Shown: positions 1 to 55,970 of the stretch, one piece after another
Layout of the letters: the number at the start of each line of letters is the position of its first letter
Position numbering within the stretch: position 1 is the first letter of the stretch
Assembly (NCBI GenBank): GCA_950097015.1
Contig: CATNEN010000029.1
Location: 2,232,001 to 2,296,000, forward strand
DNA: 64,000 nucleotides
Direction: 5' to 3'
DNA from: Macrostomum hystrix
Lineage: Eukaryota > Animalia > Platyhelminthes
The notes under the pieces: generated by a model
Databases searched by the model: none
What the model was told of the DNA's origin: nothing
Seen by the model: only the letters and a program-made list of their open reading frames with translations
Translations under genes and position numbers: made by a program

Positions 1-226
1 AGCCGACAGCACAGTCGAAACTACTGCACGGTGCATCTGATTGGCTGCGTACAGCTGTTCAGTCCATGGACTTAGGGGTTGCCACACCCACCATCAATTG
101 CCCTAGCTGATGCTGGCACCCATCTGAAGCATTGCAGAGTTGAGAGTCTAGAGTCTAAGAGTTCCAGTGGAGTTAGGAATCGAACCCCCGACCTTGAAGT
201 CGCCAGTCTGAAGCTCTAAACACTAG
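1..226 (-). mobile_element. SINE family 1 (tRNA-head, CORE-like), diverged copy cut by the window edge
   Basis: Reverse complement matches the SINE at 55658: B box GGTTCGATTCC (ggaatcgaacc at about 176-186) and the shared 3' body (agccgacagcacag...gcatctga...cagtccatggact). Confidence 0.85.
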
Positions 227-355
227 TGCGTCCTTCTACCTTTAGTCTGTACTTAAGCTAAATGTTTTGGTTTCATTATGCAGGAATCGACTTAAAACTG
301 TGGACTCCACATATTCAGTGCTTTTTACGTACAGCCAAAATTCTGAATCTCACAG

Positions 356-2217
356 ACGTGTCCTGGCTGATCATCGCTCTGTCCATGCTAGGCAAGCTCT
401 TCAACACTGCAGCCTTCGGCGTGATCTACCTGTGGACGGCTGAGCTCTATCCGACTAGCATTCGCAACATCGGCGTCTCAGCCAGCTCCATGTGGGCCAG
501 AATTGGTACACTGTTCGCACCGGCTCTGGCAGATATTGTAAGTAGCGAACTTCAGAATGTGAAGCTAATTTGTTTTTCTACAGATATTGTTCACGGAAAC
601 ATTCAGAAAGCTTTGGTTTCCAAAACTGTCGCTGCTCACAGTGTCAGTCCAGATTGAAGCCAGCAACAAGAAAGATGCCATTCTTCCGCACTCTCAATTT
701 TCGAACACATTTTTAGCAAAACTTTGTCCCAGGCCAGGCAGGCACGGTGCTGGCGTATACCATTTTCGTCGCCATTTCCACAGCGGCCGTCTTGCTGGCG
801 CTGTTCGTGCCAGAGACTGGGAGTAGAAAGCTGCCAGACTCACTGGAGCAAATGATCTCCATCAGGTGCCTTTCACTTTGAAGCTAGGAGACGTCTGCAA
901 AATGCTAGAGTTAATTAGAGCGTGAACAGGTCCGCTAGCGTAATCCACAGATACTAGAATACTATAACAGTGTGTTATAATATCTATGGCCTAATCCGAA
1001 CCAAATTCATAATTTATTACATTCATGACTTTTGTTTCCTAAGTTATTCATGTTCTAAAAACTATTTTCAAAAAATAGGCATACTGTTCATGCTCTAAAA
1101 GTTTTGAAAACCTAGCGGGTGCTTTAAAACAGATATTAGAAATTACCTCCTAGAATAATTTGCTAGCATATCTCGTCCCTTTCGTAGAGATTCTCTCACT
1201 CTGGTATCAGAGATGCTCTCACTCTGGTATCAGAGATGCTCTCACTCTGGTATCAGAGATGCTCTCACTCTGGTATCAGAGATGCTCTCACTCTGGTATC
1301 ATAGATGCTCTCACTCTGGTATCAGAGATGCTCTCACTCTGGTATCAGAGATGCTCTCACTCTGGTATCAGAGATGCTCTCACTCTGGTATCAGAGATGC
1401 TCTCACTCTGGTATCATAGATGCTCTCACTCTGGTATCAGAGATGCTCTCACTCTGGTATCAGAGATGCTCTCACTCTGGTATCAGAGATGCTCTCACTC
1501 TGGTATCATAGATGCTCTCACTCTGGTATCATAGATGCTCTCACTCTGGTATCAGAGATGCTCTCACTCTGGTATCAGAGATGCTCTCACTCTGGTATCA
1601 GAGATGCTCTCACTCTGGTATCAGAGATGCTCTCACTCTGGTATCAGAGATGCTCTCACTCTGGTATCATAGATGCTCTCACTCTGGTATCAGAGATGCT
1701 CTCACTCTGGTATCAGAGATGCTCTCACTCTGGTATCAGAGATGCTCTCACTCTGGTATCATAGATGCTCTCACTCTGGTATCATAGATGCTCTCACTCT
1801 GGTATCAGAGATGCTCTCACTCTGGTATCAGAGATGCTCTCACTCTGGTATCAGAGATGCTCTCACTCTGGTATCAGAGATGCTCTCACTCTGGTATCAG
1901 AGATGCTCTCACTCTGGTATCAGAGATGCTCTCAGAGACAATTTCAAATTTGTAGTTTACGCGCTAGTACAAGTTATTAGAGAAGTTTCTACAAAAATGT
2001 ACAGTTTTGAAGCACCCGCTTTCGTCAGGAAAAATTTAGATAAAAAACGAGTTCTGGGAAGCTATGGGAATTTTTTAAGTACTTGATTTCCTGCTATATA
2101 AAATATTTCTTGCAATCTTTCAGGTTCAACTCTTCAGTCGGCAACGAACTTGGAAAAGAGGAGGAAAGCGGCGAGGAGAAGGATCAGGAGTCAGTGGACT
2201 TCAACACAAAACTTTGA
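356..2217 (+). CDS. SLC22 / organic cation transporter family protein, 3' exons only: 356-537, about 738-865, 2124-2217
   Basis: Exon 356-537 encodes LSMLGKLFNTAAFGVIYLWTAELYPTSIRNIG (ELYPT..R signature), donor GTAAGT at 538. Next exon gives ...LALFVPETGSRKLPDSLEQ (PET..LP motif); its acceptor is uncertain and a small exon may lie between. Last exon after TTTCAG joins in phase 2 and ends ...DFNTKL* (PDZ-type tail). The 5' part of the gene is outside the window. Confidence 0.85.
1186..1933. repeat. 23-bp minisatellite (agagatgctctcactctggtatc), about 32 copies, in the last SLC22 intron
   Basis: Directly visible tandem unit with a g/t variant (cagag/catag). Confidence 0.97.
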
Positions 2218-3164
2218 CCTGGACCTCAACTCAAAACAGTCTCATCTTAAGTCTAAGGCTAACTGCTGATGTACATCATATCAGAAACTGTAATTTAAGT
2301 GTACTTTTTGTCGAATGTAGCTTTATTGTAGCAGAATGATATCATAACTTTCCTAGAAACGAAAATACCTTGAAACCAAATTTTGTGCTTGAAATACCCA
2401 TATTTCATCTCTGATGTTTGACTATACCTTTTAGTTACGTTTTACGAATTGCAGAATGTTTTTATATAATTACTAATTTACATCCGATCAAAGTAATATT
2501 TGTGTCCTACAAATAAACGGATCATGTAAAATGTCAACATGTTGAATTTCATTTTTAACAGGTTTTAACACGAGCTTGCACTGCCTAAGCCTACACACAC
2601 ATTGCACTTTCACGTAAAGCTTACTCTACAAAAAACCAATATGTTTTATTCGATTCGAACACAAAGAATACAAAACTCGTAGCAAAAAGAACCTAAAACT
2701 AACTCAGAGCACTGTTCACAAACAGTCGAAATTGCTGTGTTTCAATTTTTATATAATTCAAGTCTTTTTATTTGTGTTTTCGATTTTTGTTTTACTTCTA
2801 CTTATTTTATTTTTCAATACGAACACGAAGCTTGTAGTGCGGTGATACGCCAAATCTTCATGTTGGACCACTGACTTTAGAATGTAGAGACCTAAGTCAT
2901 TTTCTCTTAACATGCTACTATATGAAAAGTTATTTTGTAACATAATTTAGAGAGAAGCAATTACAAGGACTTTGATTTAAAAAGAGGACGTTAGACACTA
3001 GTTTTCGTTAGTATCTCTCGCGGAATGATAATATAAATAGGCTAACGGTTAGACTTATGCTTAAGTGTACAGCTTAAATTAGAGGTTTCCTTACAAGCTT
3101 TGCTAAAAAATATAAATTGCACCCTTTGTGGCCACCTCATCGGACGTCGTCTGATTGGGATTGG

Positions 3165-3868
3165 GTGCAAGATTGGGAGGGGGTGCAATATAGGGAGGGG
3201 TGCAAGATAGGTAGGGGGTGCAAGATAGGCAAGGGTGCAAGATAGGGACGGGGTGCAAGATAGGCAGGGGGTGCAAGATAGGCAGGGGTGCAAGATAGGG
3301 ACGGGGTGCAAGATAGGCAGGGAGTGCAAGATAGGCAGGGGTGCAAGATAGGGACGGGGTGCAAGATAGGCAGGGGGTGCAAGATAGGCAGGAATGCAAG
3401 ATAGGCAGGGGTGCAAGATAGGCAGGAATGCAAGATAGGGACGGGGTGCAAGATAGGCAGGGGGTGCAAGATAAGCAGGGGGTGCAAGATAGGCAGGGGG
3501 TGCAAGATAGGGACGGGGTGCAAGATAGGCAGGGGGTGCAAGATAGGCAGGGGTGCAAGATAGGGACGGGGTGCAAGATAGGCAGGGGGTGCAAGATAGG
3601 CAGGAATGCAAGATAGGCAGGGGTGCAAGATAGGCAGGGGGTCCAAGATTGGGAGGGGGTGCAATATAGGGAGTGGTGCAAGATAGGCAGGGGTGCAAGA
3701 TAGGGACGGGGTGCAAAATAGGGAGGCGGTCCAAGATAGGGACGGGGTGCAAGATAGGCAGGGGTGCAAGATAGGGACGGGGTGCAAGATAGGCAGGGGG
3801 TGCAAGATAGGCAGGGGGTCCAAGATAGGCAGGGGTGCAAGATAGGCAGGGGTCCAAGATAGGGAGGG
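3165..3868. repeat. G-rich 18-19-bp minisatellite (ggggtgcaagataggcag / ggggtgcaagatagggac)
   Basis: Tandem variants visible; source of the PAYLAP/CLSCTP pseudo-ORFs. Confidence 0.95.
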
Positions 3869-5455
3869 GCCCTGGTTTTGAATTTGGGTCCAGGAAGTCA
3901 GGGGGGTTGGTTTCTGTTAGGGATGGGTTTGGTGGTCGGTTTGGTTTGGGATCGGGGTCCGGGTGGGTGTGGGGTGGATGACCCTGCCAATCCGGTGCGA
4001 AGGCGGTAGAAGTGAAGGGACTTTCTTTACTGCGGCCCATAGAGCTCCTGAATCCAGCTCCTTAATTGGCCCCTTCCAACGATTATACTCTCTGCACCAA
4101 TCTCATCTTTCCCGTGCCAAATTAAAAAACTCTCGTATCAATATAAACATTTACAAAAGAACAGGTGACTATTTTAATAGCTAAAGTTGCTGTAATTATA
4201 TGTATTTAATTTAAGAAAACAAACTGAGCAACAAACGTGAACAATCAATGTTACAAAGCACATATAGCAGTAGATAGAGGACATTGCACTTCTCATTTTT
4301 TCACACCAGGAACGGTCAGTTTTACATGCTATACTTCCCTAACATAGCAACGAGGTGATTTTTTAGCAGTCATACAGTAGTGTGCAGTATACACAAGTTT
4401 ACACAGTACACATCTTAAAGAAAATTTATGTAGCACGATGTAAATATACGCTCGTAGTATATTACATATATGCCAACAAATCATCAGTAACTTATATACA
4501 CGCAAAAGACGCACATTAAAAGTATGTAGCAGACCTCTCAGCTCTCTCTAGATTTGGGATTGGTGAGCTGAGTATTTGGGGGGGATGGTAGCGTAAGTTA
4601 TAAGGGTAGAAGTAGGTATTTTCACGCTGTTCGGATTATACCTAAGGTAGCGCTAATGCCCGAGCGGCAAGACACTAGCTACTAACAAAGGGGGGAATAA
4701 TATTTTACTGCTGCTGGCACGAGGGCTAAATTCACTGATTTGAGGTACACAGTCCGTGGGGCGTATTAGGATGGATTGAAGTTGCCTGGTGATGCTTTCG
4801 CAGTTACCTTCTTCTATGGGATTGGAATTAATATAGTTTCATTAGGGTGGACAATTGCTGAGTTTAGGGACTTCAGGGGATATATTTAGAGAACTTCAGG
4901 CGGGCTTCAGATAGACTTCAGGTGGGTATTTAAATGGGATTTTAAGGCGGGATAATCGGGTTATAAAGGGGTTTATAATAGGGTGGATTTGGTTTTAAAG
5001 GGCCGACGAGGGATCTTTAGGTGGGAAGACCGGGAGGGTAAGGAAATTCAACTGCTTCTTCCTAGTAGAAATAACTAAGTAACTCAGTCTATTTATATCG
5101 TAACTGAGAAACAAGGAGGAAATAGGAGCGTTCGTGTTTATTCAGGCTGATTCACTGGGAACGGGGGAGACGCAAGTTGTAGGAGTGTTTTAAAATGGCA
5201 TGATATTTATACTCGTACAAAAAAATAGGGGTGGGTGCATGACCATCTGGGGCACATAAAACGAGCCGCGAGTGTTGCGTAAAAAAGACGACTACAGATA
5301 ATAGCGTAAAATTGGCGGGAGTTTAAAAAAGATCTGCCTCAAGTATTTTGTATTAATACGTACGCACGTGATGGCGACTCAGGAAGTTCTCAATTGCAGA
5401 AGAAAGTTTGCCTAATAAATGCCACATTAAAGACGGTAGTGTTAGTGAATCGGAT

Positions 5456-6277
5456 TCATTTCAGCGAACAAACAGGCGAGCTCGAGCGCAATTGCGCTGG
5501 AGTCTCTTCGTGTGGCTTCAAAATCCTGGGCTGCTGCAGACGACGATTATCATTGGTGCGAGGATAGCGGCACCAGCTCCGACAGGTTCGGGCGCGATCT
5601 GCATAGTACACATGAGCTCGACAGATAACCGGACGTTGTCCTGGCCAAAAGGGTGAAATAACACTCGAACTGGCTCGATAATTTTTGCAGCCATCTACAG
5701 TGGGCTGCTGTGACTTCAGACGATCAACTTCAACAGGTGGCGCAGGGCCAGAGACGTAAAGCAAAGAATCAGCAATTCTAGCCATGCGATTCAGTGGTTG
5801 ATCCTTAAACGCTGATAACGCTTCTCTACACTCTGGCGGAACGCAACGCAAGAGCATGGCTTTGATTTCATCGTCACTCACCTTTGCATCACACTGAGCT
5901 ATCTGACTCTTCACTCGGCGAACAAAAGCGGAGGGCTTATCGGCGCCTAAGCCAGTAGAGTTCATCAGCTCGACGAGTTTCCTCAGTTGATACGGATATA
6001 GATGGTCAAGAACAGCCTTTTTTAGGGTCGAATAGCTAGATAGGGCCTGTGATACCATTGATGCAATGTCTTCTGGTAGAAGACTAACCAGGTAGAAGTA
6101 GCGCGCTTCTTCCGAAACGATGCCACTCAAAGCGAATCGCGCCTCCAACACACAAAACCATGCAACTGGATTGTTTCGCAAAAGCTTGTAGCTCAAAGAA
6201 CCACCAATTTCATCGTTAAATTTCTCAAATCTACAATTCGAAGTCGATGATGCGTCAAATCTCAGATCTTCTGCCAT
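5456..6277 (-). CDS. Ty3/gypsy (CsRn1-lineage-like) Gag protein, 273 aa, intact and stand-alone
   Basis: NPVAWFCVLEARF...EEARYFYLVSLL...YSTLKKAVL...LGADKPSAFVRR is a typical Ty3/gypsy capsid N-terminal pattern. C-terminal CRAHVYYADRARTCRSWC is exactly C-X2-H-X9-C-X3-C (CHCC knuckle). No protease or RT ORF follows the TGA at 5456. Confidence 0.85.
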   Translation of the reverse strand: MAEDLRFDASSTSNCRFEKFNDEIGGSLSYKLLRNNPVAWFCVLEARFALSGIVSEEARYFYLVSLLPEDIASMVSQALSSYSTLKKAVLDHLYPYQLRKLVELMNSTGLGADKPSAFVRRVKSQIAQCDAKVSDDEIKAMLLRCVPPECREALSAFKDQPLNRMARIADSLLYVSGPAPPVEVDRLKSQQPTVDGCKNYRASSSVISPFWPGQRPVICRAHVYYADRARTCRSWCRYPRTNDNRRLQQPRILKPHEETPAQLRSSSPVCSLK

Positions 6278-6298
6278 AGTTTAAAATGGCTAATGGCT

Positions 6299-6312
6299 CT
6301 AAAAAATCAAGC
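6299..6312 (-). promoter_or_regulatory. Candidate splice / trans-splice acceptor 21 nt upstream of the Gag ATG
   Basis: Minus strand reads cttgattttttAG|agccattagccattttaaactATG; an in-frame TAG in the leader shows it is UTR. Confidence 0.5.
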
Positions 6313-8944
6313 ATGAGTCGGTGTACAAGAAAAATTCTAAGTACTATTTGAAGTACTAGTACTAATCAAAGCACGAAAAAGGCAACAAAAATTTGGTAAC
6401 TGCTATAAGTTTTGAGTACTGTCTATACCTACATCTACCGCAAAGCTTATATTAGAATGAATCTAGAAAATTCTGGAAATACATTTAAGGGCGGCAATAT
6501 AAATATTTTCTTATCAAAGCTTAATTTAATCTTATTCATACGCTTTTGTATGAACGTTTGTTTGAGTATAATTCGTTTTTAAATTTCATTTGTTTAAGCA
6601 GCAAGCAATTTTTTTTAATTTTAGTAGGGCGCTAAGAATTTAGAACACAATCACCGTGTCACAATTTATTATTATATGACCGTCACCGATTTTTCGGCAC
6701 AAGTTCCAGTTCCAGTTCCAGAGAATGCATACTGGGAAATATATTTTAAAAAAACAACTTTGTGCATTTGTAAACACAAAATGCTTTAAAATATCAAAAC
6801 TGCCAAAAGAAATCTATTCAAAAAAATTTCATCTAGATTCTCTGCCTAATCACTGAGTTATAGCCTTCTACTTTATTATAGAATGCATGTCCCGTTAAAC
6901 GCTATGCATTTTAAAAGTCAATTGTGACATTTTTGCAGAAAATCGAAAAATTTATCATTTCAACAGTCAGAGCCTATCGAGTTGATTTCAAATATCAGAA
7001 CTGCAAGAAGAAATCTACTCAAAAATAAAATTTCGATTTTATATCCTGTTGGCATGGATGCATTGGGGTTTACATAGCATAGGGCCTATTATTGACATGA
7101 TAGTATAGTATAGCATAAAAAGGCCTAGTTTTTTGTATAAAAGAATGGGCCTATAAATAATGTAGCCTAGCCTATACATGGTGTGCAGTTTACTCTGGCC
7201 TGGACTGCTTTACTTTTAGTTCATTATTAAATGTCTTCTGGGCTTAGATCTTGTCTCATTCAATACAATTTTGTACAAAAATGCAAAGATGCAAAAAGTT
7301 TTCCAAGAAATGTATTGATCTTTATTGCAACAAGTCAAATGTTTTTGACAATTGATTTGTCAAAAACACCATAGTAAAAATGTTCCATAACTGTAGGCTC
7401 ATATTCAGTGTGGCAGTGTGGCTAAAGTTTTTTAGTTAAGAATGTATGTAAAAATACTTTTATTTAAAGCTTTAAAATATAAATTAAAGTATTCTTAGGC
7501 CTACTTTTAATATTGAAACATTGTTCAAAGCTTGTGCAACAGTCAATCTCCAATAAACCATGAGTCTCCATGACTGTATAATGACAGTGACAATTTCCAA
7601 AAATCACTAGATATGGGCCTAAAAGGCTTAGAAAGTGATGGAGCATAGGTTGGAGTAGGCAACCATTTCTTGAGTTGTAAAAGTGGCACAACAAAGGGCT
7701 TTGTGTACTTTCCTACCAACTGAAGAACCATTCTGTCTGGCCTGATCTCAAATTAGACTAGGCATATAGGATTGCTGCTGTTGCTATGGGGCTTTAGCAA
7801 ATGTCACTGAAGAATGTAGACAAGGTGATGTAACATTGACAACTTTTAACTTAACTATTCTTAGTACTTCCAAATAGATGATGCAGTGTAAGAAATTAGG
7901 CTTGTATTTTTGTGGGTTTAAAAGTTTATTTGTAATTCCTGCTGTTTCTTTGCCACTAAAGGCAAATCTTATTTGCTAGTGCTCACCTGGGTAGGCATTG
8001 GAAAAGAGATCATAAGAATTAGAAAAAAAGATAATTGCTGATCTTTTGGCAATGTGTAACTATGGCAAATAAACAAATTTTATGCAGTCGTTCCAAAATA
8101 GAACCTGCCATATTAGTCACAACTAGTGGTGCTTGTTGAAAAATACATAGATTTAAGTTTTTTCTGTTAATCCAATTTGTAAACACAATGTCAATTTTCA
8201 GCCTTAGAGTTGGCTGTGAAGTGAAGCTTCCATGACAGTGAAGCTCTGTCACAACAATGGCTGACCATACAGCAATATCTTCACTAAGTCAAGAATCACA
8301 TCAGAAAATATGGATTTAGGTTGCAGTAAAGAAGTCTGCAAACCTGCATTGTTGCCAGTTAAAGCAGCGGCTACAGTATCAATCGGTTGCTTGGCAACAT
8401 CTAGTGCTATTGTTGCTTGCACTCCTCTACTGGCTGTGGCCCCTAAAAACATAGATAATCTGTCTAAACTAACTACTTCTGCATTACTGCACTGCATTAA
8501 AATGTCATCTGATTTGCCTGTGGAGACTTCTAAGCGGGTTTGTTTGTTGCGTAGGCCTCGAACTCTCGACCTACCAGGCATGGCAACTGTCTCCCAGACT
8601 CTTCCAGATGGGCCAGCACCATTGGCTGATTCGGAGGCCATTTAGCCTACATCAGTTTTTGCTGTCTTTCTTTTTTTGTCTCTTGCTTTGCTTCTCTAAT
8701 GCTAGTTTATTAGCTGTAAATATATTTATTTAAACCATACAGAATGCCTAAACTGCCTACAGAACTGATTCATTAAAGAGGAAGACATAGGTGGTCATGT
8801 GGCGTGCAAGCCTTCTAAGAGGAGGGCAATAGTGCTTACTAAAAATTATTTAGAAGTGGTCAATGAGGCCCACTAGAATATTCCTCACAAGGGTGGGCTC
8901 ATGGCTTCTAAAATGACCACCTGGGTAAAAATTAGCCTAAAAAT

Positions 8945-9285
8945 GACCCCCCAGAGGTGGGCAATGAGCCTACCAAAATGACCTCCCCAGAGTTGGGCAA
9001 TGAGCCTACCAAAATGACCCCCCAGAGTTGGGCAATGAGCCTACCAAAATGACCCCCCCAGAGTTGGGCAATGAGCCTACCAAAATGACCCCCCCAGAGT
9101 TGGGCAATGAGCCTACCAAAATGACCCCCCCAGAGTTGGGCAATGAGCCTACCAAAATGACCCCAGAGATGGGCAATGAGCCTACCAAAATGACCCCAGG
9201 GCAATGAGCCTACCAAAATGACCCCCAGGGCAATGAGCCTACCAAAATGACCCCAGGGCAATGAGCCTACCAAAATGACCATCCA
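8945..9285. repeat. About 25-32-bp minisatellite (gggcaatgagcctaccaaaatgaccccc[agagtt])
   Basis: Tandem units visible with variable C-run and loss of agagtt in the last copies. Confidence 0.93.
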
Positions 9286-11616: not shown

Positions 11617-11917
11617 TAATAATAATAATAATAATTGATTATACCTGCCCCAATTGGGTCAGATGTACAGCCGACAGCACAGCCGCAGCTAATGCGCGGC
11701 GCATCTGAGGGCTGCGTACAGTCCATGGACTGGGGGGACGCCACACCCACCTTCAATTATCCCAGCTGAAGCTGGTACCCAATTAACAGCTGGGTGAACT
11801 GAAGCAATGCAGAGTTAAGTGTCTTGCTAAAGGACACAAATTGTTCCAGTGGAGTCGGGAATCGAACCCCCGACCTTAAAGTCGTGAGTCCGGCGCCCTA
11901 ACCACTAGGCTACAACC
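11617..11917 (-). mobile_element. SINE family 1, full length
   Basis: Minus strand: ggttgTAGCCTAGTGG (A box) ... GGTTCGATTCC (B box), gtgtcctttagcaagacacttaac...cagttcacccagctg (CORE/MIR-like), (ATT)n tail; candidate TSD gttcaag at 11610-11616 and 11924-11930. Confidence 0.92.
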
Positions 11918-12076
11918 TCAGTAGTTCAAGAGACAAGGCTGCGTGGGCAGTCACTGTTTGCTGTCTCATCCAATAGCCAGTGGCTCAAATCTGCCTTATT
12001 TGCAATGATAATGTGAGAACGCGGATAAGCCGAGGGTTTTCCCAACCTGGGAGTAAAAAGCGTTTGAGCAGCATCG

Positions 12077-13258
12077 ATGCCTTTGGTAATTTTCGTTCTA
12101 ATCTTACTGGTGTCGCCACCAGTGTTTGCCTCGGCTCTGCCAGTTGGAAGCGCGACTACTCTGTCCGAAGATGGAAGCTCTAAGTCCTCCTTTACCAGAT
12201 GTTTGCATATTTTTTGTTTAAAGCTCCCGCAGTTCATGTTGACCTGTGGATTCTGACACTTGAATCTCGAACCTCAGGCACAGCCGACACCTGATGCAGC
12301 AGTTGCTATCCGGCCTGTCCGCCTGTCTGTCCACCACTTCCTGCTTGAATCAGATTTTGGTGGCCTTGGAAACGGCCGTGGCCGCAGCTGCGGAAGCCGA
12401 CGGGCAATCGGTGGGGGGTCCGGCGGCCGTCCAACAGCTCACCGGAGCAGCCGCTGACGCCTTTCAGCACCGGGCCAATCGGCGACGCCTGCTGGTGCTG
12501 ATGTCGCTGGGCCTGGGCGTAGGCCTCGCCTGCCTGCTGGCCCGCTGCTGCTGCGTCTGGATCAAGCGCGACATCCGCATGCACGAAAACAAGATCAACC
12601 AGATCCTCAGCGACAGGTCTGCCTTACTCAGATCCCACTTACTCAGATTCCACCTTACTCAGATCCCACTTGCTCAGATCCCACTTACTCAGATCCCACT
12701 TACTCAGATCCCACTTACTCAGATCCCACCTTACTCAGATCCCACTTACTCAGATCCCACCTTACTCAGATCCCACTTACTCAGATCCCACCTTACTCAG
12801 ATCCCACTTACTCAGATCCCACCTTACTCAGATCCCATCTCATTTAGATCCCACATTACTCAGATTTACCCTGATAGCATATTACTGAAATTCCTAATTG
12901 TCGATTTTCCGTCGTTCCTGCCATTGCACTCGCCATTGCTATTGCCGTCTCTCTCTTTTTGCTCTCGCGTCTCGCCATTGCTCTAGCCTTTGCTCTCGCC
13001 GTGCTCTCGCCTTTGCTCTCTCTGTTGCTCTCGCCGTGGTCTCGCCGTGCTCTCGGTGTAGTCTCGCCGTTGCTCTCCCTGTTGCTATCGCCGTTGCTCT
13101 CCCTGTTGCTATCACCGTTGCTCTCGCCGTGCTCTCGCCGTGATCTCGCCGTGCTCTCGCGTTGCTTTCCCTGTTGCTATCGCCGTTGTTGCCGTTGCTG
13201 TCCTCATTTTGAATCCAGCCACCCAACTGCCCAGCGTATAATTAGCCGAACCTTGTAA
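12077..13258 (+). CDS. Putative small type I membrane protein (tentative exons 12077-12183, 12278-12616, 13219-13258)
   Basis: ATG 12077 opens a signal peptide (MPLVIFVLILLVSPPVFA). GC-rich exon encodes a TM helix followed by CCC (LLVLMSLGLGVGLACLLARCCC). Phases are compatible but both donors (GTCCTC, GTCTGC) are weak, so the model is tentative. Confidence 0.45.
12622..12870. repeat. 15-17-bp minisatellite (cttactcagatccca[c])
   Basis: Tandem units begin 5 nt after the putative donor at 12617. Confidence 0.92.
12915..13200. repeat. Degenerate 11-13-bp repeat (ctcgccgttgct-like)
   Basis: Low-complexity recurring ctcgcc(g/a)t(t/g)gct units. Confidence 0.8.
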
Positions 13259-13729
13259 TACACCTGAAAGTCTGCTAAGGTCGCACAAGGATAAAGTTGC
13301 AGCAAATGCCCCGTAATTTTGATCCTTTTAGTCACGAAAGCTCACAAACATTGTTCGGTCTTTTTCAACAATAAAGAGAGAAGAAAATTACTGAAAACGG
13401 ATTGTCCTAAAAACACCTGTCAGTTTTTCCATTTGTCGAATCGACTGGCCTACTTTGCCAGTAGACCCGGCATATCAACCGGCCTCTACAGAAGACAAAT
13501 TAGCTGGGTTTGCTTTGGGCGAGGCATTGTGCTGTTTTTTAAGTCAGTTTTCTAAATGAGTGTCTAGCGTCACTCTAGCCAGACTCAAGAGTCAAGAGCG
13601 GAAAATTGCTAGTTGCTACTCTGAAGAACTGCAATCACCATGCTTCAATTTTCCTTCTATGTATGCTCGCAAGTTTCTTGATTTCTCGAATCTTTTTATT
13701 GGTTTCTAGATTTATATTCTTCGATTTGT

Positions 13730-14125
13730 AAATGTTCGTCGATTTCCTGATGTTCGTCGATTTCCTGATATTCGTCGATTTCCTGATATTCGTCGATTTC
13801 CTGATATTCATGGATTTCCTAGTATTCGTCGATTTCCTTATATTCGTCGATTTCCAGACATTCGTTGATTTCCTAGTATTCGTCGATATCCTGATATTCG
13901 TCGATTTCCTGATATTCGTCGATTTCCTGATATTCATGGATTTCCAGATATTCGTCGATTTCCTGATATTCGTCGATTTCCTGATATTCTTCGATTTCCT
14001 GATATTCGTCGATTTCCTGATATTCGTCGATTTCCTGATATTCTTCGATTTCCTGATATTCGTCGATTTCCTGATATTCGTCGATTTCCTCTGATGTTCG
14101 TCGATTTCTACATTCGTCGATTTCC
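13730..14125. repeat. 18-bp minisatellite (ttcgtcgatttcctgata)
   Basis: About 21 tandem units; source of FVDFLI / RKSTNI / QEIDEY pseudo-ORFs. Confidence 0.96.
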
Positions 14126-14211
14126 ACCTAATCCCCCTTAATCCACGGACAGTACGCCGCGCAATAGCTGCGGCTGTGCCACTGACTGAACAAGTGCTCC
14201 AGCTAGCCCAG

Positions 14212-17215: not shown

Positions 17216-20200
17216 GGCTGCTGGAAGGCACCACCGTCGGCAAACGGCTGCTGCGGCTGCTGCTGCTGCTGCCCGCCACCGATTTGGCTTTCAATCTTGA
17301 AATAAAAAATAAAGCTAATTAAATGATTAATTCTCGGGAAATGCTCATGCGTATTTGGCTGCGTTAGGGTGTGTCAGGGACAGCACTGAGGTGTCAGCAG
17401 TGAGGTGTCAGCAGTGAGGTGTCAGGGAGAGCAGTAAGATGTCAGCAGTGAGGTGTCAGCAGTGAGGTCAGTGAGATGTCAGGCTGAGCAGTGGTCAGCA
17501 GTGAGGTCAGTGAGATGTCAGGCTGAGCAGTGGTCAGCAGTGAGGTCAGTGAGATGTCAGGCTGAGCAGTGGTCAGCAGTGAGGTCAGTGAGATGTCAGG
17601 CTGAGCAGTGGTCAGCAGTGAGGTCAGTGAGATGTCAGGCTGAGCAGTGGTCAGCAGTGAGGTCAGTGAGATGTCAGGCTGAGCAGAGGTCAGCAGTGAG
17701 GTCAGTGAGATGTCAGGCTGAGCAGTGGTCAGCAGGGAGGTCAGTGAGATGTCAGGCTGAGCAGTGGTCAGCAGTGAGGTCAGTGAGATGTCAGGCTGAG
17801 CAGTGGTCAGCAGTGAGGTCAGTGAGATGTCAGGCTGAGCAGAGGTCAGCAGTGAGGTCAGTGAGATGTCAGGCTGAGCAGTGGTCAGCAGTGAGGTCAG
17901 TGAGATGTCAGGCTGAGCAGAGGTCAGCAGTGAGGTCAGTGAGATGTCAGGCTGAGCAGAGGTCAGCAGTGAGGTCAGTGAGATGTCAGGCTGAGCAGTG
18001 GTCAGCAGTGAGGTCAGTGAGATGTCAGGCTGAGCAGAGGTCAGCAGTGAGGTCAGTGAGATGTCAGGCTGAGCAGTGGTCAGCAGTGAGGTCAGTGAGA
18101 TGTCAGGCTGAGCAGAGGTCAGCAGTGAGGTCAGTAAGATGTCAGGCTGAGCAGTGGTCAGCAGTGAGGTCAGTGAGATGTCAGGCTGAGCGGAGGTCAG
18201 CAGTGAGGTCAGTGAGATGTCAGGCTGAGCAGTGGTCAGCAGGGAGGTCAGTGAGATGTCAGGCTGAGCAGTGGTCAGCAGTGAGGTCAGTGAGATGTCA
18301 GGCTGAGCAGTGGTCAGCAGTGAGGTCAGTGAGATGTCAGGCTGAGCAGTGGTCAGCAGTGAGGTCAGTGAGATGTCAGGCTGAGCAGAGGTCAGCAGTG
18401 AGGTCAGTGAGATGTCAGGCTGAGCAGTAGGTCAGCAGTGAGGTCAGTGAGATGTCAGGCTGAGCAGTGGTCAGCAGTGAGGTCAGTGAGATGTCAGGCT
18501 GAGCAGTGGTCAGCAGTGAGGTCAGTGAGATGTCAGGCTGAGCAGTGGTCAGCAGTGAGGTCAGTGAGATGTCAGGCTGAGCAGTGGTCAGCAGTGAGGT
18601 GTCAGAGAGAGCGGTGAGGTTGAGATAGCTTGGCCAGCTAACCCACCTGATCGGCCGTTTCGAAGGTACCCTCAGCGCCCTGTCGGTACTTGTTGAAGGC
18701 AAAGTAGGTCAGGCCGGCCATGGAGGCCACAGAGAAGAAGGCGAACGTGATGCTAGCCCGAACGTTTGACACCTGCCACGGCTCAACTCCGGCATTCTTC
18801 AGCCACTGGGCGGAGGTGTTGGACCACTTGTTGGCCATCAGGCAGAAGGATACGAAGTATAGGAAGGTCCAGGCAGCTGCAAGGCAAAGAGGGACGGCTG
18901 TTCTTTGGACTTTAGTGGTTATTTTATCTAATTTAACAAATTAAAGTTCCTTTTTTAAGTAGCATATAGCAATAAGACGCTTAAATGATATGAAGTCTTA
19001 GGGACTGTGTGATCTGAGGAATGTGAAGTCAAGGGAGTGTGGGATCTGATGAATGTGAAGTCTACGGAGTGTGGGATCTGAGGAATGTGAAGTCTAGGGA
19101 GTGTGGGATCTGAGGAATGTGAAGTCTAGGGAGTGTGGGATCTGAGGAATGTGAAGTCTAGGGAGTGTGGGATCTGAGGAATGTGAAGTCTAGGGAGTGT
19201 GGGATCTGAGGAATGGTAAGCCTAAGGAGTCTGGGATCTGAGGAATGTAAAGTCTAGGGAGTGTGGGATCTGAGGAATGTAAAGTCAAGGGAGTGTGGTA
19301 TCTGAGGAATGTAAAGTCAAAGGAGTGTGGGATCTGTTTTTAAAAAGCCTAGGGTGTATGGGACCTGAGGAATGTGAAGTCTAGGGTGTGTGGGACCTGA
19401 GGAATGGTAAGCCTAAGGAGTCTGGGATCTGAGGAATGTAAAGTCTAGGGAGTGTGGGATCTGAGGAATGTAAAGTCAAGGGAGTGTGGTATCTGAGGAA
19501 TGTAAAGTCAAAGGAGTGTGGGATCTGTTTTTAAAAAGCCTAGGGTGTATGGGACCTGAGGAATGTGAAGTCTAGGTAGTGTGGGATCTGAGGAATGTGA
19601 AGTCTTAGAGAATGTGTGATCTGAGGAATGTAAAGTCTAGGGAGTGTGGTATCTGAGGAATGTAAAGTCAAGGGAGTGTGGCATCTGAGGAATGTGAAGT
19701 CTAGGGAGTGTGGCATCTGAGGAATGTGAAGTCTAGGGAGTGTGGGATCTGTGATTGAAAAGCCTAGGGAGTGTGGCATCTGAGGAATGTGAAGTCAAGG
19801 GAGTGTGGCATCTGAGGAATGTGAAGTCTAGGGATTGTGGGAACTAATCTACTCGAATAGCACATTTTCGAGTTTCAATTATAGTACAATGTAAAATTCC
19901 TACTGAAATTTCTAAGCGAAAACTTAAATGTAGAATGAGATGAATCGGGAATTTTAACAATACCATGTTGGAGCATTTAGGCGAGAAAACCTAAAAAACT
20001 AATTTTACTAAAGAAACGGAAAAGGGAAAACACCAGTTCCGAAATGACTAGCACCCTTGAAGCAACTCCATTGGCCAGAAAATCGGCAATCGATATGTGG
20101 TGGGACTTTAGCCCAGGTTCCGCTGGAGGAAGTGCTCACCAGAAAAGCCCATGTCAGCAATGACCAGCAGCCTGCGGTGCTGCACTGAGGACATCTTTTC

Positions 20201-22317: not shown

Positions 22318-24371
22318 ATGTCGACATCCCGCTCCCAATGCCCAATCCAAATGGAGCTTCGCATCGTTGGTCTCGTGTCCGACGTGAAGTTCCACGTTGC
22401 CCGCAACTGCGCCGCCGACCTCGAGAAGCTGGTCCAGCCGGAGCGACGCCTCGAGCTGACTGTCACGCCGCTGCTAGAATTCGAATGGGCTGAATTCATT
22501 CGGCGAACCGTGCGCGAAGCGGGAGGCGAGTTCTGGACCTACGATGACCAGGTCGTCGTCTTCCTCGACGGCCAACTGCGCGGGAGCGCCCAATGGCTGC
22601 TGCAGTGGGCGATGGACACGTACGGCTACGAGGACTTCCGACCGCTGCCGCTGTACAGGACGCTAACCGAGGACGCCTACGCCGACGAGTTTAAACAGCG
22701 CGGACACGACTTTGTCTACCTTGACATTTCCGTTGCTGGCGAACCAGCCGGTCGTCTGGTCATCGAGCTGTTCAAAAGTGTGGCGCCGCGAACCTGCGAG
22801 AACTTCCGTCAGCTATGCACCGGCGAGCGCGGCGTCTCAAAGCACAACCCGGTTGAGCAGTTCAACCTGTGCTATCGTAAATCCATCTTTCATCGCCTGG
22901 TACCCGAAGGCTGGATCCAAGGCGGAGGTGAGTAATGCTTGCCCATCATTATTTGATATTTATAGCCGTATTTAAATCTCTTCAAGCGTTTCTATAACCG
23001 GTTCGATCATCTATTTATTCGATGAGCTTAAGTGGTTGTGACTTTTCTTTGTTTAAGTTTGCTTTAATTGGTATTCCCTTTTGCTTATTTACTACTTATA
23101 GTAGCTTTGAAGTTCGGCTTTTTTAGAAATTGTATAGAACTATTTTTTATTACGAATTAGTAATTTAAATGCTATTTCATGTGTTACAACCATCGTCTCT
23201 ACAAGGGTCTCACTTATTTTTGCGTTTCTCCAAGATAGGGTTGCAGCCAGAGGGGGTTGCAGCCAGAGGGGGTTGCAGCCAGAGGGGGTTGCAGCCAGAG
23301 GGGGTTGCAGCCAGAGGGGTTTGCAGCCAGAGGGGTTTGCAGCCAGAGGGGTTTGCAGCCAGAGGGAGTTGTAGCCAGAGGGGGTTGCAGCCAGAGGGGG
23401 TTGCAGCCAGAGGGGATTGCAGCCAGAGAGGGTTGCAGCCAGAGGGGGTTGCAGCCAGAGGGGATTGCAGCCAGAGGGGGTTGCAGCCAGAGGGGGTTGC
23501 AGCCAGAGGGGATTGCAGCCAGAGGGGGTTGCAGCCAGAGGGGTTGCAGCCAGAGGGGGTTGCAGCCAGAGGGGATTGCAGCCAGAGAGGGTTGCAGCCA
23601 GAGGGGGTTGCAGCCAGAGGGGATTGCAGCCAGAGGGGGTTTAACCAGAGGGGTTGCAGCCAGAGGGGGTTGCAGCCAGAGGGGGTTTAACTAGAGGGGT
23701 TGCAGCTAGAGGGGGTTTAACCAGAGGGGTTGCAGCCAGAGGGTGTTGTAGCCTAGTAGTAGTTAGAGCATCGGACTGCAGGACTTGAAGGTCGGGGTTC
23801 GATTCCTGTCTCCACTAGAACAATTTATGCTTTTTAACAAAACACTTAGACACTTAACTCTGCATGCTTCTAATTCGCAGTAGCTGCGGCTGTGCTGTGC
23901 CATTCGCTGCACATCTGGCCCGACTGTGGCAGGTGTAATCAATTAAAATCATGGGTTTCCTCGAGGCCAAATAAAAAATGGTAATCGTGTGTTTCGCCCT
24001 CCTCCTAAATAAGTAAACGTCTTTGACTGGTCTTTATTCAACTTCCTGCAGACATTTGGTACGGCAAGGGCAACGGTGGCGAGTCAGTCTACGGCGAGAC
24101 TTTCGACGACGAAAACTTCATCCTGTCGCACGATCGCCGCGGGGTCGTTAGCATGGCCAACAGGGGCCGGCACACCAATGGCTCGCAATTCTTCATCACC
24201 CTGAAGTCCTCCTGCTGGATGGACACAAAATTTGTAGCATTCGGCCGCGTTGTCGAAGGCTCAATCGTTCTAGAGCGCATGGAATCTGTTGGCACCGTCA
24301 ACGAGCGACCGTTGGACGAGATTCAGGTGTCGGATTGCGGCGAGTATGTGCCGAATCTGGCGCGCGACTGA
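22318..24371 (+). CDS. PPIL6: Cyclophilin-like PPIL6; exons 22318-22927, 24052-24371 (309 aa)
   Basis: N-terminal IVGLVSDVKFHVARNCA...PLLEFEW extension typical of PPIL6, then cyclophilin domain FVYLDI...GRLVIELF...PRTCENFRQLCTG...FHRLVPEGWIQGG|DI...GESVYGETFDDENF...SMANRGRHTNGSQFFITL; donor GTGAGT, acceptor CTGCAG, phase 1. Confidence 0.93.
23238..23745. repeat. 16-bp minisatellite (agggggttgcagccag) in the PPIL6 intron
   Basis: About 31 units, running directly into a SINE head. Confidence 0.96.
23745..23945 (+). mobile_element. SINE family 1, internally deleted copy
   Basis: ttgtagcctag...ggttcgattcc...gacacttaactctgca then jumps to gctgcggctgtgctg...gcacatctg...gcaggtgtaatc. Confidence 0.85.
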
Positions 24372-28404: not shown

Positions 28405-31400
28405 TCACACAAACTCGCCCGGATCATCGTCAACTGAGTTGAGCGGCTGCGTCTGCGGATGCGCGTTCCCGCCGCCGCTGCCGATGCCGATTCCGCCGCC
28501 ACCGCCACCGCCACCGACGCCGCCGCCTTTCCGCTTCGGTAGGAGGCCGCCGCTGATGCCGGCGCCGGCTTTTTTCTCTGCAATCTCCAACTGCCTGCCG
28601 GCCGAGTCATTGTGCCGCATCGGCCGGCTTTTGAACATCAGCCAGAGTGCCTCCGTCACTTCGGAGGCGACTAGCTCGCCGGCATTCTGTGAGATCAGCC
28701 GAATGATGAAGACGCCGTCGGGTCGAAGGTAGTCGTCGACGAATTGAAAGCTGCGCTTCTTATCGCCCGGGTCGATGGCGCTGCGGAGTTTGAGAAACTT
28801 GCGCACAAAGTGCATCCGGTTTGAGCGGAATGTCGACTTGTAGATCCAAAAGATGAAGCTGCTGATTGACAGCACCGAGACCAGGATCATCCAGAACCAC
28901 AGGAAGATGTAGATCTTCTCGTTAAACATGTTGATGGGCAGGACGCACTGCACAGTGTGGCGATGCATATTGGCGCCCATCTTGCGGATGTGGAAGTCGC
29001 ACATTGTTATCCTGGGGAAATTGCCGCTCTCCTCCCACTGCCGGCCCTCCGCCAGGTCACGCAGCAGCTCGAGGCCGTAGAATGTATAGTTAGTGCCCAG
29101 GTACTTGTTCATGAGGAAGAACTGCCCGATGACATTCGTGATGTAGAGCACTTTGCAGATGAGGTAGAGGCAGACTAGGAAATTTCCGTAGCGCTTGCCG
29201 AACCAGAAGAAGCAGCAGTTCCTGGCGATGCAGTGCTTGCAGTTCGTCAGGCAGCCGGCGCGGTACTCCCGCTGAGCCCCTAGCGAGTCCTCGATGTGCT
29301 TGGCCACGTAGCGCACGCTGGTCTGACGGCTCAGCGGGTCCTTGATCATCTCGACGTCGCCGGCGACCTCCATGATGTTCGATAGCTGCGGTGGACGGTA
29401 ATTGGTAGACTGGGCTGCTATGGGCATTTTTAGCATTGCACATGAAACTGTTTGTAAGACTGCAAACAAATTCGTTGAAATAATGTTACTCATGGGCTGT
29501 TAAAAAGGTTGCTTACAGACTGCTAAAGAGGATTGCTTACAGACTGCTGAAGAGGATTGCTTACAGACTGCTGAAGAAGATTGCTTACAGACTGCTGAAG
29601 AGGATTGCTTACAGACTGCTGAAGAAGATTGCTTACAGACTGCTGAAGAAGATTGCTTGCAGACTGCTGAAGAAGATTGCTTACAGACTGCTGAAGAGGA
29701 TTGCTTACAGACTGCTGAAGAGGATTGCTTACAGACTGCTGAAGAAGATTGCTTACAGACTGCTGAAGAGGATTGCTTGCAGACTGCTGAAGAGGATTGC
29801 TTACAGACTGCTGAAGAGGATTGCTTACAGACTGCTGAAGAGGATTGCTTACAGACTGCTGAAGAGGATTGCTTGCAGACTGCTGAAGAGGATTGCTTAC
29901 AGACTGCTGAAGAGGATTGCTTGCAGACTGCTGAAGAGGATTGCTTACAGACTGCTGAAGAGGATTGCTTACAGACTGCTGAAGAAGATTGCTTACAGAC
30001 TGCTGAAGAAGATTGCTTACAGACTGCTGAAGAAGATTGCTTACAGACTGCTGAAGAGGATTGCTTACAGACTGCTGAAGAAGATTGCTTACAGACTGCT
30101 AAAGAGGATTGCTTACAGACTGCTGAAGAGGATTACTTACAGACTGCTGAAGAAGATTGCTTACAGACTGCTGAAGAAGATTGCTTACAGACTGCTGAAG
30201 AAGATTGCTTACAGACTGCTGAAGAGGATTGCTTACAGACTGCTGAAGAGGATTACTTACAGACTGCTGAAGAAGATTGCTTACAGACTGCTGAAGAAGA
30301 TTGCTTACAGACTGCTGAAGAAGATTGCTTACAGACTGCTGAAGAGGATTGCTTACAGACTGCTGAAGAGGATTGCTTGCAGACTGCTGAAGAGGATTGC
30401 TTACAGACTGCTGAAGAAGATTGCTTACAGACTGCTGAAGAGGATTGCTTACAGACTGCTGAAGAGGATTGCTTACAGACTGCTGAAGAAGATTGCTTAC
30501 AGACTGCTGAAGAGGATTGCTTACAGACTGATGAAGAGGATTGCTTACAGACTGCTAAAGAGGATTGCTTACAGAATGCGTGAAGAAGATTCAAAGGAAG
30601 GTTATTTTAAGGCAGTTGCTGTTGACACATTCATCATGTGAGCGTTTCTGTAATTTTCAGAGTTTCTGTTAATGAAAAAAACTAGATTTGAGTGACAAGC
30701 ATCATCATTAAACAGGCAAGTCCAAGCTGACATTCAGCATTTAGAATCGGTTTTAATAGGGATTTTCTCTATTTGAAATCGCGTCCCAAATCAGAAGCAG
30801 AAGCGATCAATCAGTTCAGCACTCCGCCTACAATCTACAGTGCGTGTCATCAGCTAGCAGCGTGACTGTCAACAATGGCCAGTTACCCAGTCTAATGGCC
30901 CCTCATTGTCCTAGTCTTTGCAGCAGTACTGTCGCAGCTTATTGTGCTAATCCAACCAGACAAAATGCTATTATTCATTTTTATCCCATTGAATGTGATC
31001 ACGACTTCTTAGACTCACTGACTTTAATCCTATAAACAGTTGCTGAAATACGACAACTTTACTGAAGTTTTTTTAAGTGTACCCGAAGGCTTTCGTTGTC
31101 AAATAATGCTCGGGTGACTCGCAAACTCTGATTGTATTTGAGTCGGGGTAGTGGGCAGCCATCGCAGGGCAATCAGGCAGATCAAACACTTGGGTGGTAG
31201 CGAACAAACTCTCGGAAGCATTCTTGTAATTAAGAGACCGCTTCCACTATCAAGAGCGGGGCAAAAAAACACAACGGTAGTAAGCTTTGGCCCACATTTC
31301 AATACAATGCTATTTTTTAATAGTAGAAAGACTCCGAGGTATTCAAATACCCACTGCCTCTTTTACGATAGCTCCAAAACTGAATGACCGACTTTCACGA

Positions 31401-45900: not shown

Positions 45901-46046
45901 CTTTTCTTCTGTCGTTGGAAAAAGGAACTAGAAATTCGTGTCGTTTAGGTTGCGACACTTTTCTTCTGTCGTTGGAAAAAGGAACTAGAAATTCGGCTGG
46001 TTTAGGTTGCGACACTTTCTTCCGTAGTTGGAAAAAGAAACTAGAA
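42970..46046. repeat. 56-57-bp satellite (gaaactagaaattcgtgtggtttaggttgcgacacttttcttccgtcgttggaaaaa), about 54 copies
   Basis: Direct observation; early units carry an extra ataaatag; higher-order duplications present. Confidence 0.97.
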
Positions 46047-54461: not shown

Positions 54462-54736
54462 CACGACTTGAAGGTCGGGGGTTCGATTCCCGACTCCACT
54501 GGAATAACTTGTGTCCTTTAGCAAGACACTTAACTCTGCATTGCTTCAGTTCACCCAGCTGTTAAATGGGTACCAGCATCAGCTGGGATAATTGAGGGTG
54601 GGTTTGGCGTCCCCCCAGTCCATGGACTGAACAGCCGAACGCAGCCTTCAGATGCGTCGCTCAATAGCTGCGGCTATGCTGTCGGCTGCACATCTGACCT
54701 AATTGGGACAGGTGTAGTCAATTATTATTATTATTA
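54462..54736 (+). mobile_element. SINE family 1, 5'-truncated (A box missing)
   Basis: cacgacttgaaggtcgggggttcgattcccgactccactgg... through (ATT)n tail. Confidence 0.92.
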
Positions 54737-55657: not shown

Positions 55658-55970
55658 GGTTGTAGCCTAGTGGTTAGGGCGTCGGACTCACGACTTGAAG
55701 ATCGGGGGTTCGATTCCCGACTCCACTGGAACAATTTGCGTCCTTTAGCAAGACATTTAACTCTGCATTGCTTCAGTTCACCCAGCTGTTAAATGGGTAC
55801 CAGCATCAGCTGGGATAATTGAAGGTGGGCGTGACGTCCCCCCAGTCCGTGGACTGAACAGCTGTACGCAGCCTTCAGATGCGCCGCGCATTAGCTGCGG
55901 CTGTGCTGTCGGCTGCACATCTGACCCAATTGGGGCAGGTGTAATAAATTATTATTATTATTAATTATTA
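55658..55970 (+). mobile_element. SINE family 1, full length
   Basis: A box, B box, CORE-like middle and (ATT)n tail; TSD ttagtaagcta at 55641-55651 and 55971-55981. Confidence 0.94.

What the first reader, a model, noticed from the sequence alone, without database searches (positions are those of the whole stretch)
5137..6312. Stand-alone, intact CsRn1-type Gag with splice acceptor and poly(A) signal: candidate domesticated capsid gene
Seen: an uninterrupted 273-codon Gag ORF with ATG, an exact C-X2-H-X9-C-X3-C knuckle, a ttttttAG acceptor 21 nt before the ATG and AATAAA (minus strand, 5142-5137) about 315 nt after the stop. No protease/RT/integrase remnant follows, and I see no paired LTRs or PBS. 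Known: the CHCC knuckle characterises CsRn1-lineage Ty3/gypsy Gags, which are normally followed by pol, and gag-only genes derived from Ty3/gypsy have been domesticated repeatedly (Arc, PEG10/RTL, PNMA). Inference: this may be a host gene encoding an RNA-binding capsid-forming protein, potentially a lineage-specific RNA packaging or transfer system that keeps its nucleocapsid knuckle.
Basis: partly seen in the sequence, partly recalled or inferred. Interest (0 to 1): 0.8.

Follow-up and report, generated by a model that had tools for sequence, protein, structure and literature searches.

The report
Lone intact retrotransposon capsid gene, flatworm
A flatworm genome carries a complete capsid (Gag) gene of a gypsy-type retrotransposon that has lost all the other parts of its element; it is either a leftover or a gene the host has adopted, and the data at hand cannot decide between the two.

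Summary
Window 5456-6277 (-) is an uninterrupted 273-codon ORF with an exact C-X2-H-X9-C-X3-C knuckle (aa 219-236). It belongs to a very large Gag family (Pfam DUF7041; 2021 cluster representatives at E<=0.001). In all 11 related copies I inspected on 10 contigs, the gag ORF is followed closely by a pol ORF with PR/RT/RNaseH/IN domains. Two of those copies also show 99%-identical LTRs.

In the window there is no pol anywhere in 64 kb. The same probes hit a barnacle element at E about 1e-149. There is also no LTR pair and no primer-binding site. The closest relatives have a PBS 8-17 nt before the ATG.

The host is a flatworm; its innexin is 74% identical to that of Macrostomum lignano. The predicted fold is a helical retroviral-type capsid domain followed by the knuckle.

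Domestication itself is untested, because the host genome is not in any collection I could reach. Copy number, orthology, dN/dS and expression therefore remain open. The AATAAA is at chance level, and the TTTTTTAG is only mildly unusual.

I rate a solitary retrotransposon remnant at about 0.5, a host-adopted gag gene at about 0.3, and a non-autonomous gag-only element at about 0.15.

The parts
5456..6277 (-). Complete gag ORF, 273 codons plus stop
   Evidence: It aligns over aa 32-269 with the full-length Gag P0001 (43% identity). 2021 related cluster representatives.
5963..6181 (-). Pfam DUF7041 match (aa 33-105), the first part of the capsid-like domain
   Evidence: E = 4.6e-10, 40.2 bits against a cut-off of 28.
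5750..6181 (-). Helical capsid (CA)-like region, aa 33-176, with eight predicted helices
   Evidence: AlphaFold2 model, pLDDT 84-98 over aa 31-180. The best Foldseek matches are Arc, dArc1, HIV-1 and copia capsids and retroviral Gag, all weak (E 0.01-0.8).
5570..5623 (-). CHCC zinc knuckle C-x2-H-x9-C-x3-C (aa 219-236)
   Evidence: Read. C219, H222 and C236 are invariant and C232 is kept in at least 90% of 45 aligned Gags. pLDDT is 83-87 over aa 211-240.
5474..5488 (-). Conserved C-terminal R-x-x-S-P motif of the family (aa 264-268)
   Evidence: R264, S267 and P268 are nearly invariant in alignment A1.
6299..6306 (-). TTTTTTAG, a splice-acceptor-like motif; its AG lies 21 nt before the ATG
   Evidence: Motif match only; use as an acceptor was not tested.
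5137..5142 (-). AATAAA, 313 nt after the stop
   Evidence: At chance frequency.
4500..5455 (-). Unique, C-rich (on the - strand) 40-46% GC stretch after the stop. No coding similarity. Origin unknown: it could be element-derived or host 3' flank.
   Evidence: (all three frames are closed).

Best explanation
This is the gag gene of a CHCC-knuckle (CsRn1-like, Pfam DUF7041) Ty3/gypsy LTR retrotransposon lineage of flatworms, left on its own in an AT-rich, repeat-rich intergenic stretch. In the parent elements, ORF1 (Gag) builds the particle. A two-lobed helical capsid domain forms the shell, and the C-terminal CHCC knuckle with its basic tail holds the element's RNA. ORF2 (PR-RT-RNaseH-IN) copies and inserts that RNA, primed at a PBS next to the 5' LTR. 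At this locus the LTRs, PBS and pol are all gone, so it cannot move by itself. The most likely reading is a solitary remnant whose ORF is still open because little neutral time has passed since it left an active lineage. If transcribed, it would make only Gag. Shown here: the identity and completeness of the gene, and the absence of the other parts. Inferred: capsid assembly and nucleic-acid binding, from family membership and the model. Not shown: any transcription, or any use to the host.
For: In 11 of 11 related gag copies on 10 contigs, pol ORFs or pol homology begin 2-190 nt after gag. LTR pairs at 99% identity occur in L007 and L008, and a PBS follows the L008 LTR. The window lacks pol (positive control), LTRs and a PBS. 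The gag GC3 of 0.445 falls within the range of related element gags (0.45-0.80) and is unlike the window's innexin and cyclophilin ORFs (0.78 and 0.74). M. lignano, the nearest sequenced relative by innexin, is 21% LTR retrotransposon and 15% simple and tandem repeats (PMC5730564). This window is full of minisatellites and SINEs, so element debris is the common case. A simulation shows that an open ORF is still quite likely after a little neutral drift: 0.67 at 1% and 0.32 at 3% substitutions per site.
Against: Both ends are trimmed close to the ORF, which needs at least two events that each spared it. The two closest element relatives carry a conserved PBS 8-17 nt before the ATG, and the window has none. 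The protein is the most divergent of 53 in the tree. Its end branch is 1.73, against 0.23-0.70 for the rest of its clade. It keeps only 37 of 47 family-conserved columns, against a median of 91% for relatives. It also has a 3-residue deletion in a conserved N-terminal motif. Despite all this it has no stop or frameshift. If those extra changes were neutral decay, the ORF would probably be broken: P(open) is 0.16 at 10% amino-acid change, counting substitutions only.
Confidence: 0.5

Rival explanations
1. A host-adopted (domesticated) gag gene. The ORF is kept open by selection on the host and transcribed from host signals, possibly trans-spliced at the TTTTTTAG acceptor. It would make a capsid-like, nucleic-acid-binding protein. 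That protein could package and transfer RNA (Arc- or PEG10-like). At least as plausibly, it could interfere with particles of related active elements, as a gag-derived restriction factor does.
For: The ORF is stand-alone and complete, with every zinc ligand and the C-terminal motif. There is no pol, LTR or PBS, although 11 of 11 related copies have pol. It has the longest branch in the tree and a reduced match to family-conserved columns, yet no stop. That pattern fits a changed rather than an absent constraint. An acceptor-like motif sits just upstream with a closed 21-nt leader, and the start has A at -3 and G at +4. In M. lignano 38.8% of genes are trans-spliced (PMC5730564).
Against: No ortholog, expression or selection evidence exists. 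GC3 is unlike the neighbouring host genes. The poly(A) hexamer is at chance. The two M. lignano proteins in the same clade (P0018, P0024) match only the capsid half and sit inside long chimeric gene models, so they are not evident orthologs. The long branch may only reflect that this host's own elements are unsampled; its genome is not in the protein collection.
Confidence: 0.3
2. One copy of a non-autonomous, gag-only retroelement family that is moved in trans by related autonomous elements. Its terminal repeats would lie outside what could be recognised, or be too short or too diverged to detect.
For: The gag is intact and pol is missing. About 950 nt of unique sequence with a distinct composition follows the stop, with TATA-like and AATAAA motifs that could belong to a terminal repeat.
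Against: No direct repeat flanks the ORF, even with 7-nt words. There is no PBS. There is no second copy in 64 kb. The flanks show no similarity to the LTR and leader regions of relatives.
Confidence: 0.15

Closest known systems
Gag of CsRn1-clade Ty3/gypsy retrotransposons (CsRn1 of Clonorchis sinensis, PwRn1 of Paragonimus westermani, AgCR of Anopheles; PMC2582038)
   Same: It has the exact C-X2-H-X9-C-X3-C signature in the C-terminal region, an alpha-helix-rich body and a flatworm host. Its relatives are gag-then-pol elements with short LTRs, and some have a PBS that looks Trp-like.
   Different: This locus has no pol, LTR or PBS. I could not align it directly with CsRn1 Gag, because no CsRn1 sequence was reachable. 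The closest element relatives use a different PBS sequence (TGGTCCGG...).
Pfam PF23055, DUF7041
   Same: The match is significant and above the curated cut-off. The related Gags looked up here or listed with precomputed domains carry it almost without exception.
   Different: The Pfam model covers only about 85 residues and carries no stated function. This work places it at the start of a retrotransposon capsid domain.
Arc / dArc1 (domesticated Ty3/gypsy capsid genes)
   Same: They are gag-only genes without pol or LTRs, and their capsid domains are the best structural matches (6gse, 6s7y, 7r24).
   Different: The structural scores are weak (E 0.07-0.4, TM 0.40-0.47 on the target). There is no detectable sequence similarity. 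To my knowledge mammalian Arc has no zinc knuckle. Arc's orthology, expression and RNA transfer are established; nothing of that kind is known here.
PEG10 / RTL / PNMA and gag-derived restriction factors (Fv1, enJS56A1), from my own knowledge
   Same: These are retroelement gag genes retained by hosts, and some keep a zinc knuckle (PEG10). They give two models of function: RNA packaging, or interference with related particles.
   Different: Their knuckles are the CCHC type, they come from other lineages and they occur in vertebrates. No functional data exist for this ORF.

Membership tests
CHCC-knuckle (CsRn1-like) Ty3/gypsy Gag | C-X2-H-X9-C-X3-C signature in the C-terminal part of Gag (PMC2582038) | tested here: met
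   aa 219-236. The signature holds across the family in 45 aligned Gags. The definition was read.
CHCC-knuckle (CsRn1-like) Ty3/gypsy Gag | Sequence homology with Gags encoded as ORF1 of Ty3/gypsy elements (pol order PR-RT-RH-IN) | tested here: met
   E = 6e-51 to P0001. Relatives are followed by pol with those domains.
CHCC-knuckle (CsRn1-like) Ty3/gypsy Gag | Direct similarity to CsRn1 or PwRn1 Gag itself | not tested
   No CsRn1 or PwRn1 sequence could be fetched with these tools. Named hits were only 'hypothetical' or 'DUF7041' proteins.
Intact CsRn1-clade LTR retrotransposon (the whole element) | pol ORF downstream of gag | tested here: not met
   tblastn with seven pol pieces finds nothing in 64 kb. 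Positive control at E about 1e-149.
Intact CsRn1-clade LTR retrotransposon (the whole element) | Paired LTRs | tested here: not met
   The only flanking repeat is a dispersed tRNA-like SINE with five copies.
Intact CsRn1-clade LTR retrotransposon (the whole element) | Primer-binding site (tRNA-Trp in the clade) next to the 5' LTR | tested here: not met
   There is not one TGGT in the 1 kb upstream. The leader does not align with that of the closest relatives. Calling the relatives' PBS 'Trp' rests on my memory of the tRNA 3' end.
Domesticated gag gene (Arc/PEG10/PNMA kind) | gag-derived ORF without pol, LTRs or PBS | tested here: met
Domesticated gag gene (Arc/PEG10/PNMA kind) | Single-copy locus with orthologs at the syntenic site in related species | not testable with these tools
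   The host genome and its relatives are not in the reachable DNA collections. The exact protein is not on record. No relative closer than 44% identity was found.
Domesticated gag gene (Arc/PEG10/PNMA kind) | Purifying selection after loss of mobility (dN/dS below 1 among orthologs) | not testable with these tools
   The nearest sequences are 43-44% identical, so synonymous sites are saturated. The only evidence is an indirect simulation.
Domesticated gag gene (Arc/PEG10/PNMA kind) | Transcription and processing as a host mRNA | not testable with these tools
   Only motif matches are available.
Retroviral-type capsid fold | Two-lobed all-helical CA domain | tested here: inconclusive
   Eight confident helices over aa 37-176. 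Every top Foldseek match is a retroelement capsid or Gag, but none reaches E<=0.001.

The most novel reading that the evidence does not exclude
A flatworm has adopted a Ty3/gypsy capsid gene that still carries its CHCC nucleic-acid-binding knuckle. It would be expressed as a trans-spliced host mRNA and would either package RNA or block related retrotransposons. To my knowledge this would be the first domesticated gag gene described in Platyhelminthes; one literature search for all four terms (domesticated, gag, flatworm, capsid) returned one paper, on salamander genomes.
Probability: 0.28. Interest if true: 0.65.

Novelty: new member of a known kind. Interest (0 to 1): 0.38.

Why it matters
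If it is a remnant, it is ordinary genome debris, though it helps tie Pfam DUF7041 to the capsid domain of CHCC-knuckle gypsy elements. If it is a host gene, it would extend capsid-gene domestication to flatworms. That process is known from Arc, PEG10 and PNMA in vertebrates and from dArc in flies. A flatworm case would give a knuckle-bearing example in animals where RNAi and transgenesis are feasible.

Tried and rejected
These steps led nowhere or were set aside.

- The word-index protein search with the ORF found nothing. The full HMMER scan then showed a huge family, so the blank was a sensitivity limit.
- The exact-sequence look-up of the ORF found no record.
- PDB sequence searches with the protein and with the family profile gave only chance hits.
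- Rfam, tRNA and the bacterial-type promoter/terminator scans found nothing relevant. The last is not meaningful for a eukaryote.
- The direct repeat pair at 57-226 and 11716-11908, which brackets the ORF, was considered as LTRs. I rejected it: it is a tRNA-like SINE with five copies in both orientations.
- A PBS was sought with three patterns, one from memory and two taken from relatives. None matched near the gene.
- The window flanks show no similarity to relatives' LTR and leader regions or to each other.
- The two M. lignano proteins in the same clade were considered as orthologs. I did not accept them: only the capsid half matches, and they lie inside 750-residue chimeric models.
- Pairwise dN/dS against the nearest relatives was not attempted, because at 43% amino-acid identity the synonymous sites are saturated.

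The window is not human; its innexin is flatworm-like. The local HMM was used only to score existing sequences.

Full report
**Observation**

Window 5456-6277 on the minus strand is an open reading frame of 273 codons that starts with ATG.
- Residues 219-236 read C-x2-H-x9-C-x3-C exactly (window 5570-5623).
- TTTTTTAG lies at 6299-6306 (-), with 21 nt between its AG and the ATG.
- Those 21 nt contain in-frame TAG and TAA. An upstream exon could therefore add only untranslated leader, and the ATG at 6277 is the true start.
- AATAAA lies at 5137-5142 (-), 313 nt after the stop.

Two of the motifs carry little weight:
- AATAAA occurs 86 times on the two strands of the window. One within a few hundred bases on the right strand is expected about a quarter of the time.
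- TTTTTTAG occurs 14 times against 5.1 expected. It is enriched in the window as a whole, which fits real acceptors being among the matches, but says nothing firm about this one.

**What the protein is**

Pfam gives one match, DUF7041, at residues 33-105 (E = 4.6e-10, above the curated cut-off).

The word-index search found nothing, and the exact sequence is not on record. I therefore used the exhaustive HMMER scan.
- It returned 2021 cluster representatives at E<=0.001.
- The best was P0001, with E = 6e-51 and 43-44% identity across residues 32-269.
- Most hits are 250-340 residues long.

An alignment of 45 of them (A1) shows how the family is conserved:
- C219, H222 and C236 are invariant, and C232 is kept in at least 90%. 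The CHCC knuckle is therefore a property of the whole family.
- The family also shares a nearly invariant C-terminal R-x-x-S-P motif, which the window protein keeps.

The CX2HX9CX3C signature is the one described for Gag of the CsRn1 clade of Ty3/gypsy elements in flukes and mosquitoes (PMC2582038).

**Where relatives live**

I looked up the genomic places of ten relatives, which gave 11 gag copies on 10 contigs. In every one a pol ORF, or pol homology, begins 2-190 nt after gag:

| Locus | What follows gag |
|---|---|
| L001 (two copies in tandem) | pol complete after the first copy; the ORF after the second runs off the contig end |
| L003 / L005 | pol |
| L006 | pol |
| L007 | pol |
| L008, L009 | pol |
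| L010, L011 | pol |
| L013 | pol |
| L012 (barnacle genome) | pol not annotated, but tblastn finds it directly after gag at E about 1e-149 |

Other features of the relatives:
- L007 and L008 have LTR pairs that are 99% identical.
- In L008 a PBS follows the 5' LTR directly.
- The two closest element relatives (P0001 and P0151) share a conserved leader with a PBS-like TGGTCCGG... only 8-17 nt before the ATG.

So the family is the ORF1 of young, active-looking LTR retrotransposons of about 4.5-5.7 kb.

**What is missing in the window**

- **pol.** Seven pol pieces from these elements find nothing in the whole 64 kb. The barnacle hit shows that the probes work across phyla. All three frames after the stop are closed and show no protease motif.
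- **LTRs.** The flanks share no direct repeat, even with 7-nt words. The only repeat pair that brackets the gene is a tRNA-like SINE with five copies in both orientations.
- **PBS.** None was found with three patterns. There is not a single TGGT in the kilobase upstream. The leader does not align with those of the nearest relatives.
- **LTR-like flanks.** The flanks do not resemble the relatives' LTR regions.

Base composition changes sharply at the 5' end of the ORF, from about 30% GC upstream to 44-55% GC inside it. It stays at 40-46%, C-rich on the minus strand, for about 950 nt after the stop. No second copy of the gene lies in the window.

**Host and setting**

The window is not human.
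- An innexin ORF (28405-29493, -) is 74% identical to Macrostomum lignano innexins and about 70% identical to those of flukes and tapeworms. The host is therefore a flatworm whose own proteins are not in the collection.
- A cyclophilin exon (22318-22935 +) and an MFS-transporter exon (262-657 +) are also present.
- The gag lies on the opposite strand, in an intergenic stretch full of minisatellites.
- M. lignano is reported to be 21% LTR retrotransposon and 15% simple and tandem repeats, with 38.8% of genes trans-spliced (PMC5730564).

**Structure**

With alignment A1, AlphaFold2 gives a mean pLDDT of 79. It predicts eight confident helices between residues 37 and 176, a poorly predicted linker, and a confident knuckle region.

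The best PDB matches are the capsid domains of Arc, dArc1, HIV-1 and copia. The best viral matches are retroviral Gag proteins and a metavirus ORF1. All are weak, with E between 0.01 and 0.8. The direction of the evidence is consistent, but the fold test is formally inconclusive.

**Remnant or adopted gene**

The quick tree places the window protein in a well-supported clade (99% SH-aLRT). The clade also holds P0001, P0002, P0021 and two M. lignano proteins, so this is a flatworm-associated lineage.
- The window protein's end branch of 1.73 is the longest of 53 rows; its clade mates have 0.23-0.70.
- It keeps 37 of 47 family-conserved columns, the third lowest of 45, against a median of 91%.
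- It has a 3-residue deletion in a conserved N-terminal motif.
- It nevertheless has no stop and no frameshift.

A simulation gives the scale for neutral decay. Counting substitutions alone, the ORF stays open with probability 0.67 at 1% change per site, 0.32 at 3%, 0.16 at 5% (about 10% amino-acid change) and 0.03 at 10%. Nearly all of that long branch was therefore travelled under selection for an open frame. That selection could have acted on an unsampled active element lineage of this host, or on a host gene. I cannot separate the two, because the host genome is unreachable.

Evidence against long residence as a host gene: third-position GC is 0.445, against 0.78 and 0.74 for the two host ORFs checked, and it lies within the range of related element gags.

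Evidence for adoption: both ends are trimmed close to the ORF, which requires at least two events that each spared it.

The two M. lignano clade members match only the capsid half and sit inside about 750-residue chimeric models, so they are not evident orthologs.

**Verdict**

The gene is real, complete and truly alone.

| Reading | Probability |
|---|---|
| Solitary retrotransposon remnant | about 0.5 |
| Host-adopted gag gene | about 0.3 |
| Copy of a non-autonomous gag-only element | about 0.15 |

It is a reasonable candidate worth a copy-number, synteny and RNA-seq check, but it is not yet evidence of a new RNA-transfer system.

Noticed in passing
L010:137-1375, L011:43-2199 (relatives, not the window): A subgroup of the related elements encodes ubiquitin fused to the N-terminus of the DUF7041 Gag (P0023, P0033, P0015, P0085, P0130, P0035). 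In two cases pol ORFs follow directly, so this is a ubiquitin-Gag fusion carried by LTR retrotransposons and not a gene-model artefact. Some ORFs also carry host-gene fragments upstream (tubulin C-terminal domain, SelO plus a dynein AAA domain, a kinase piece).
   Followed up: partly
window 1-226, 11620-11918, 23745-23945, 54462-54736, 55657-55963: A tRNA-derived SINE-like repeat of about 250-300 nt occurs in five copies in both orientations, 72-93% identical to one another. ARAGORN calls no tRNA gene.
   Followed up: partly
window 1186-1934, 3163-3869, 8940-9280, 12614-12853, 13642-14180, 17299-18769, 18999-19877: There are many long minisatellite arrays with periods of 15-39 nt (23, 18, 36, 15-16, 18, 39 and 32 nt). 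The longest hold about 30-40 units, and some are 98% identical between units. Several create long spurious ORFs, for example 3042-4040 (-) and 17453-18430 (+). tblastn chance hits suggest another array at about 43000-46000.
   Followed up: no
window 28405-29493 (-): A large innexin exon (Pfam Innexin, E = 1.6e-62) is 74% identical to Macrostomum lignano innexins. This identifies the host as a flatworm that is not itself in the protein collection.
   Followed up: yes
window 22318-22935 (+) and 262-657 (+): There is a cyclophilin-type PPIase exon, and a weak major-facilitator transporter exon (below Pfam's cut-off). The cyclophilin and innexin ORFs have very high third-position GC (0.74 and 0.78), in a window averaging about 45% GC.
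   Followed up: partly
L008:12570-14855: A BEL/Pao-type Gag ORF (DUF1759) lies directly after the 3' LTR of the related gypsy element, so the two retrotransposons are neighbouring or nested.
   Followed up: no
L004:2480-2500, L006:255-272 versus L008:7858-7876, L001:4780-4800: The primer-binding sites differ among relatives. The two closest have TGGTCCGG..., while others have TGGTGAC...CGTGAT, which looks Trp-like from memory. The clade may therefore not be uniform in its primer tRNA.
   Followed up: no
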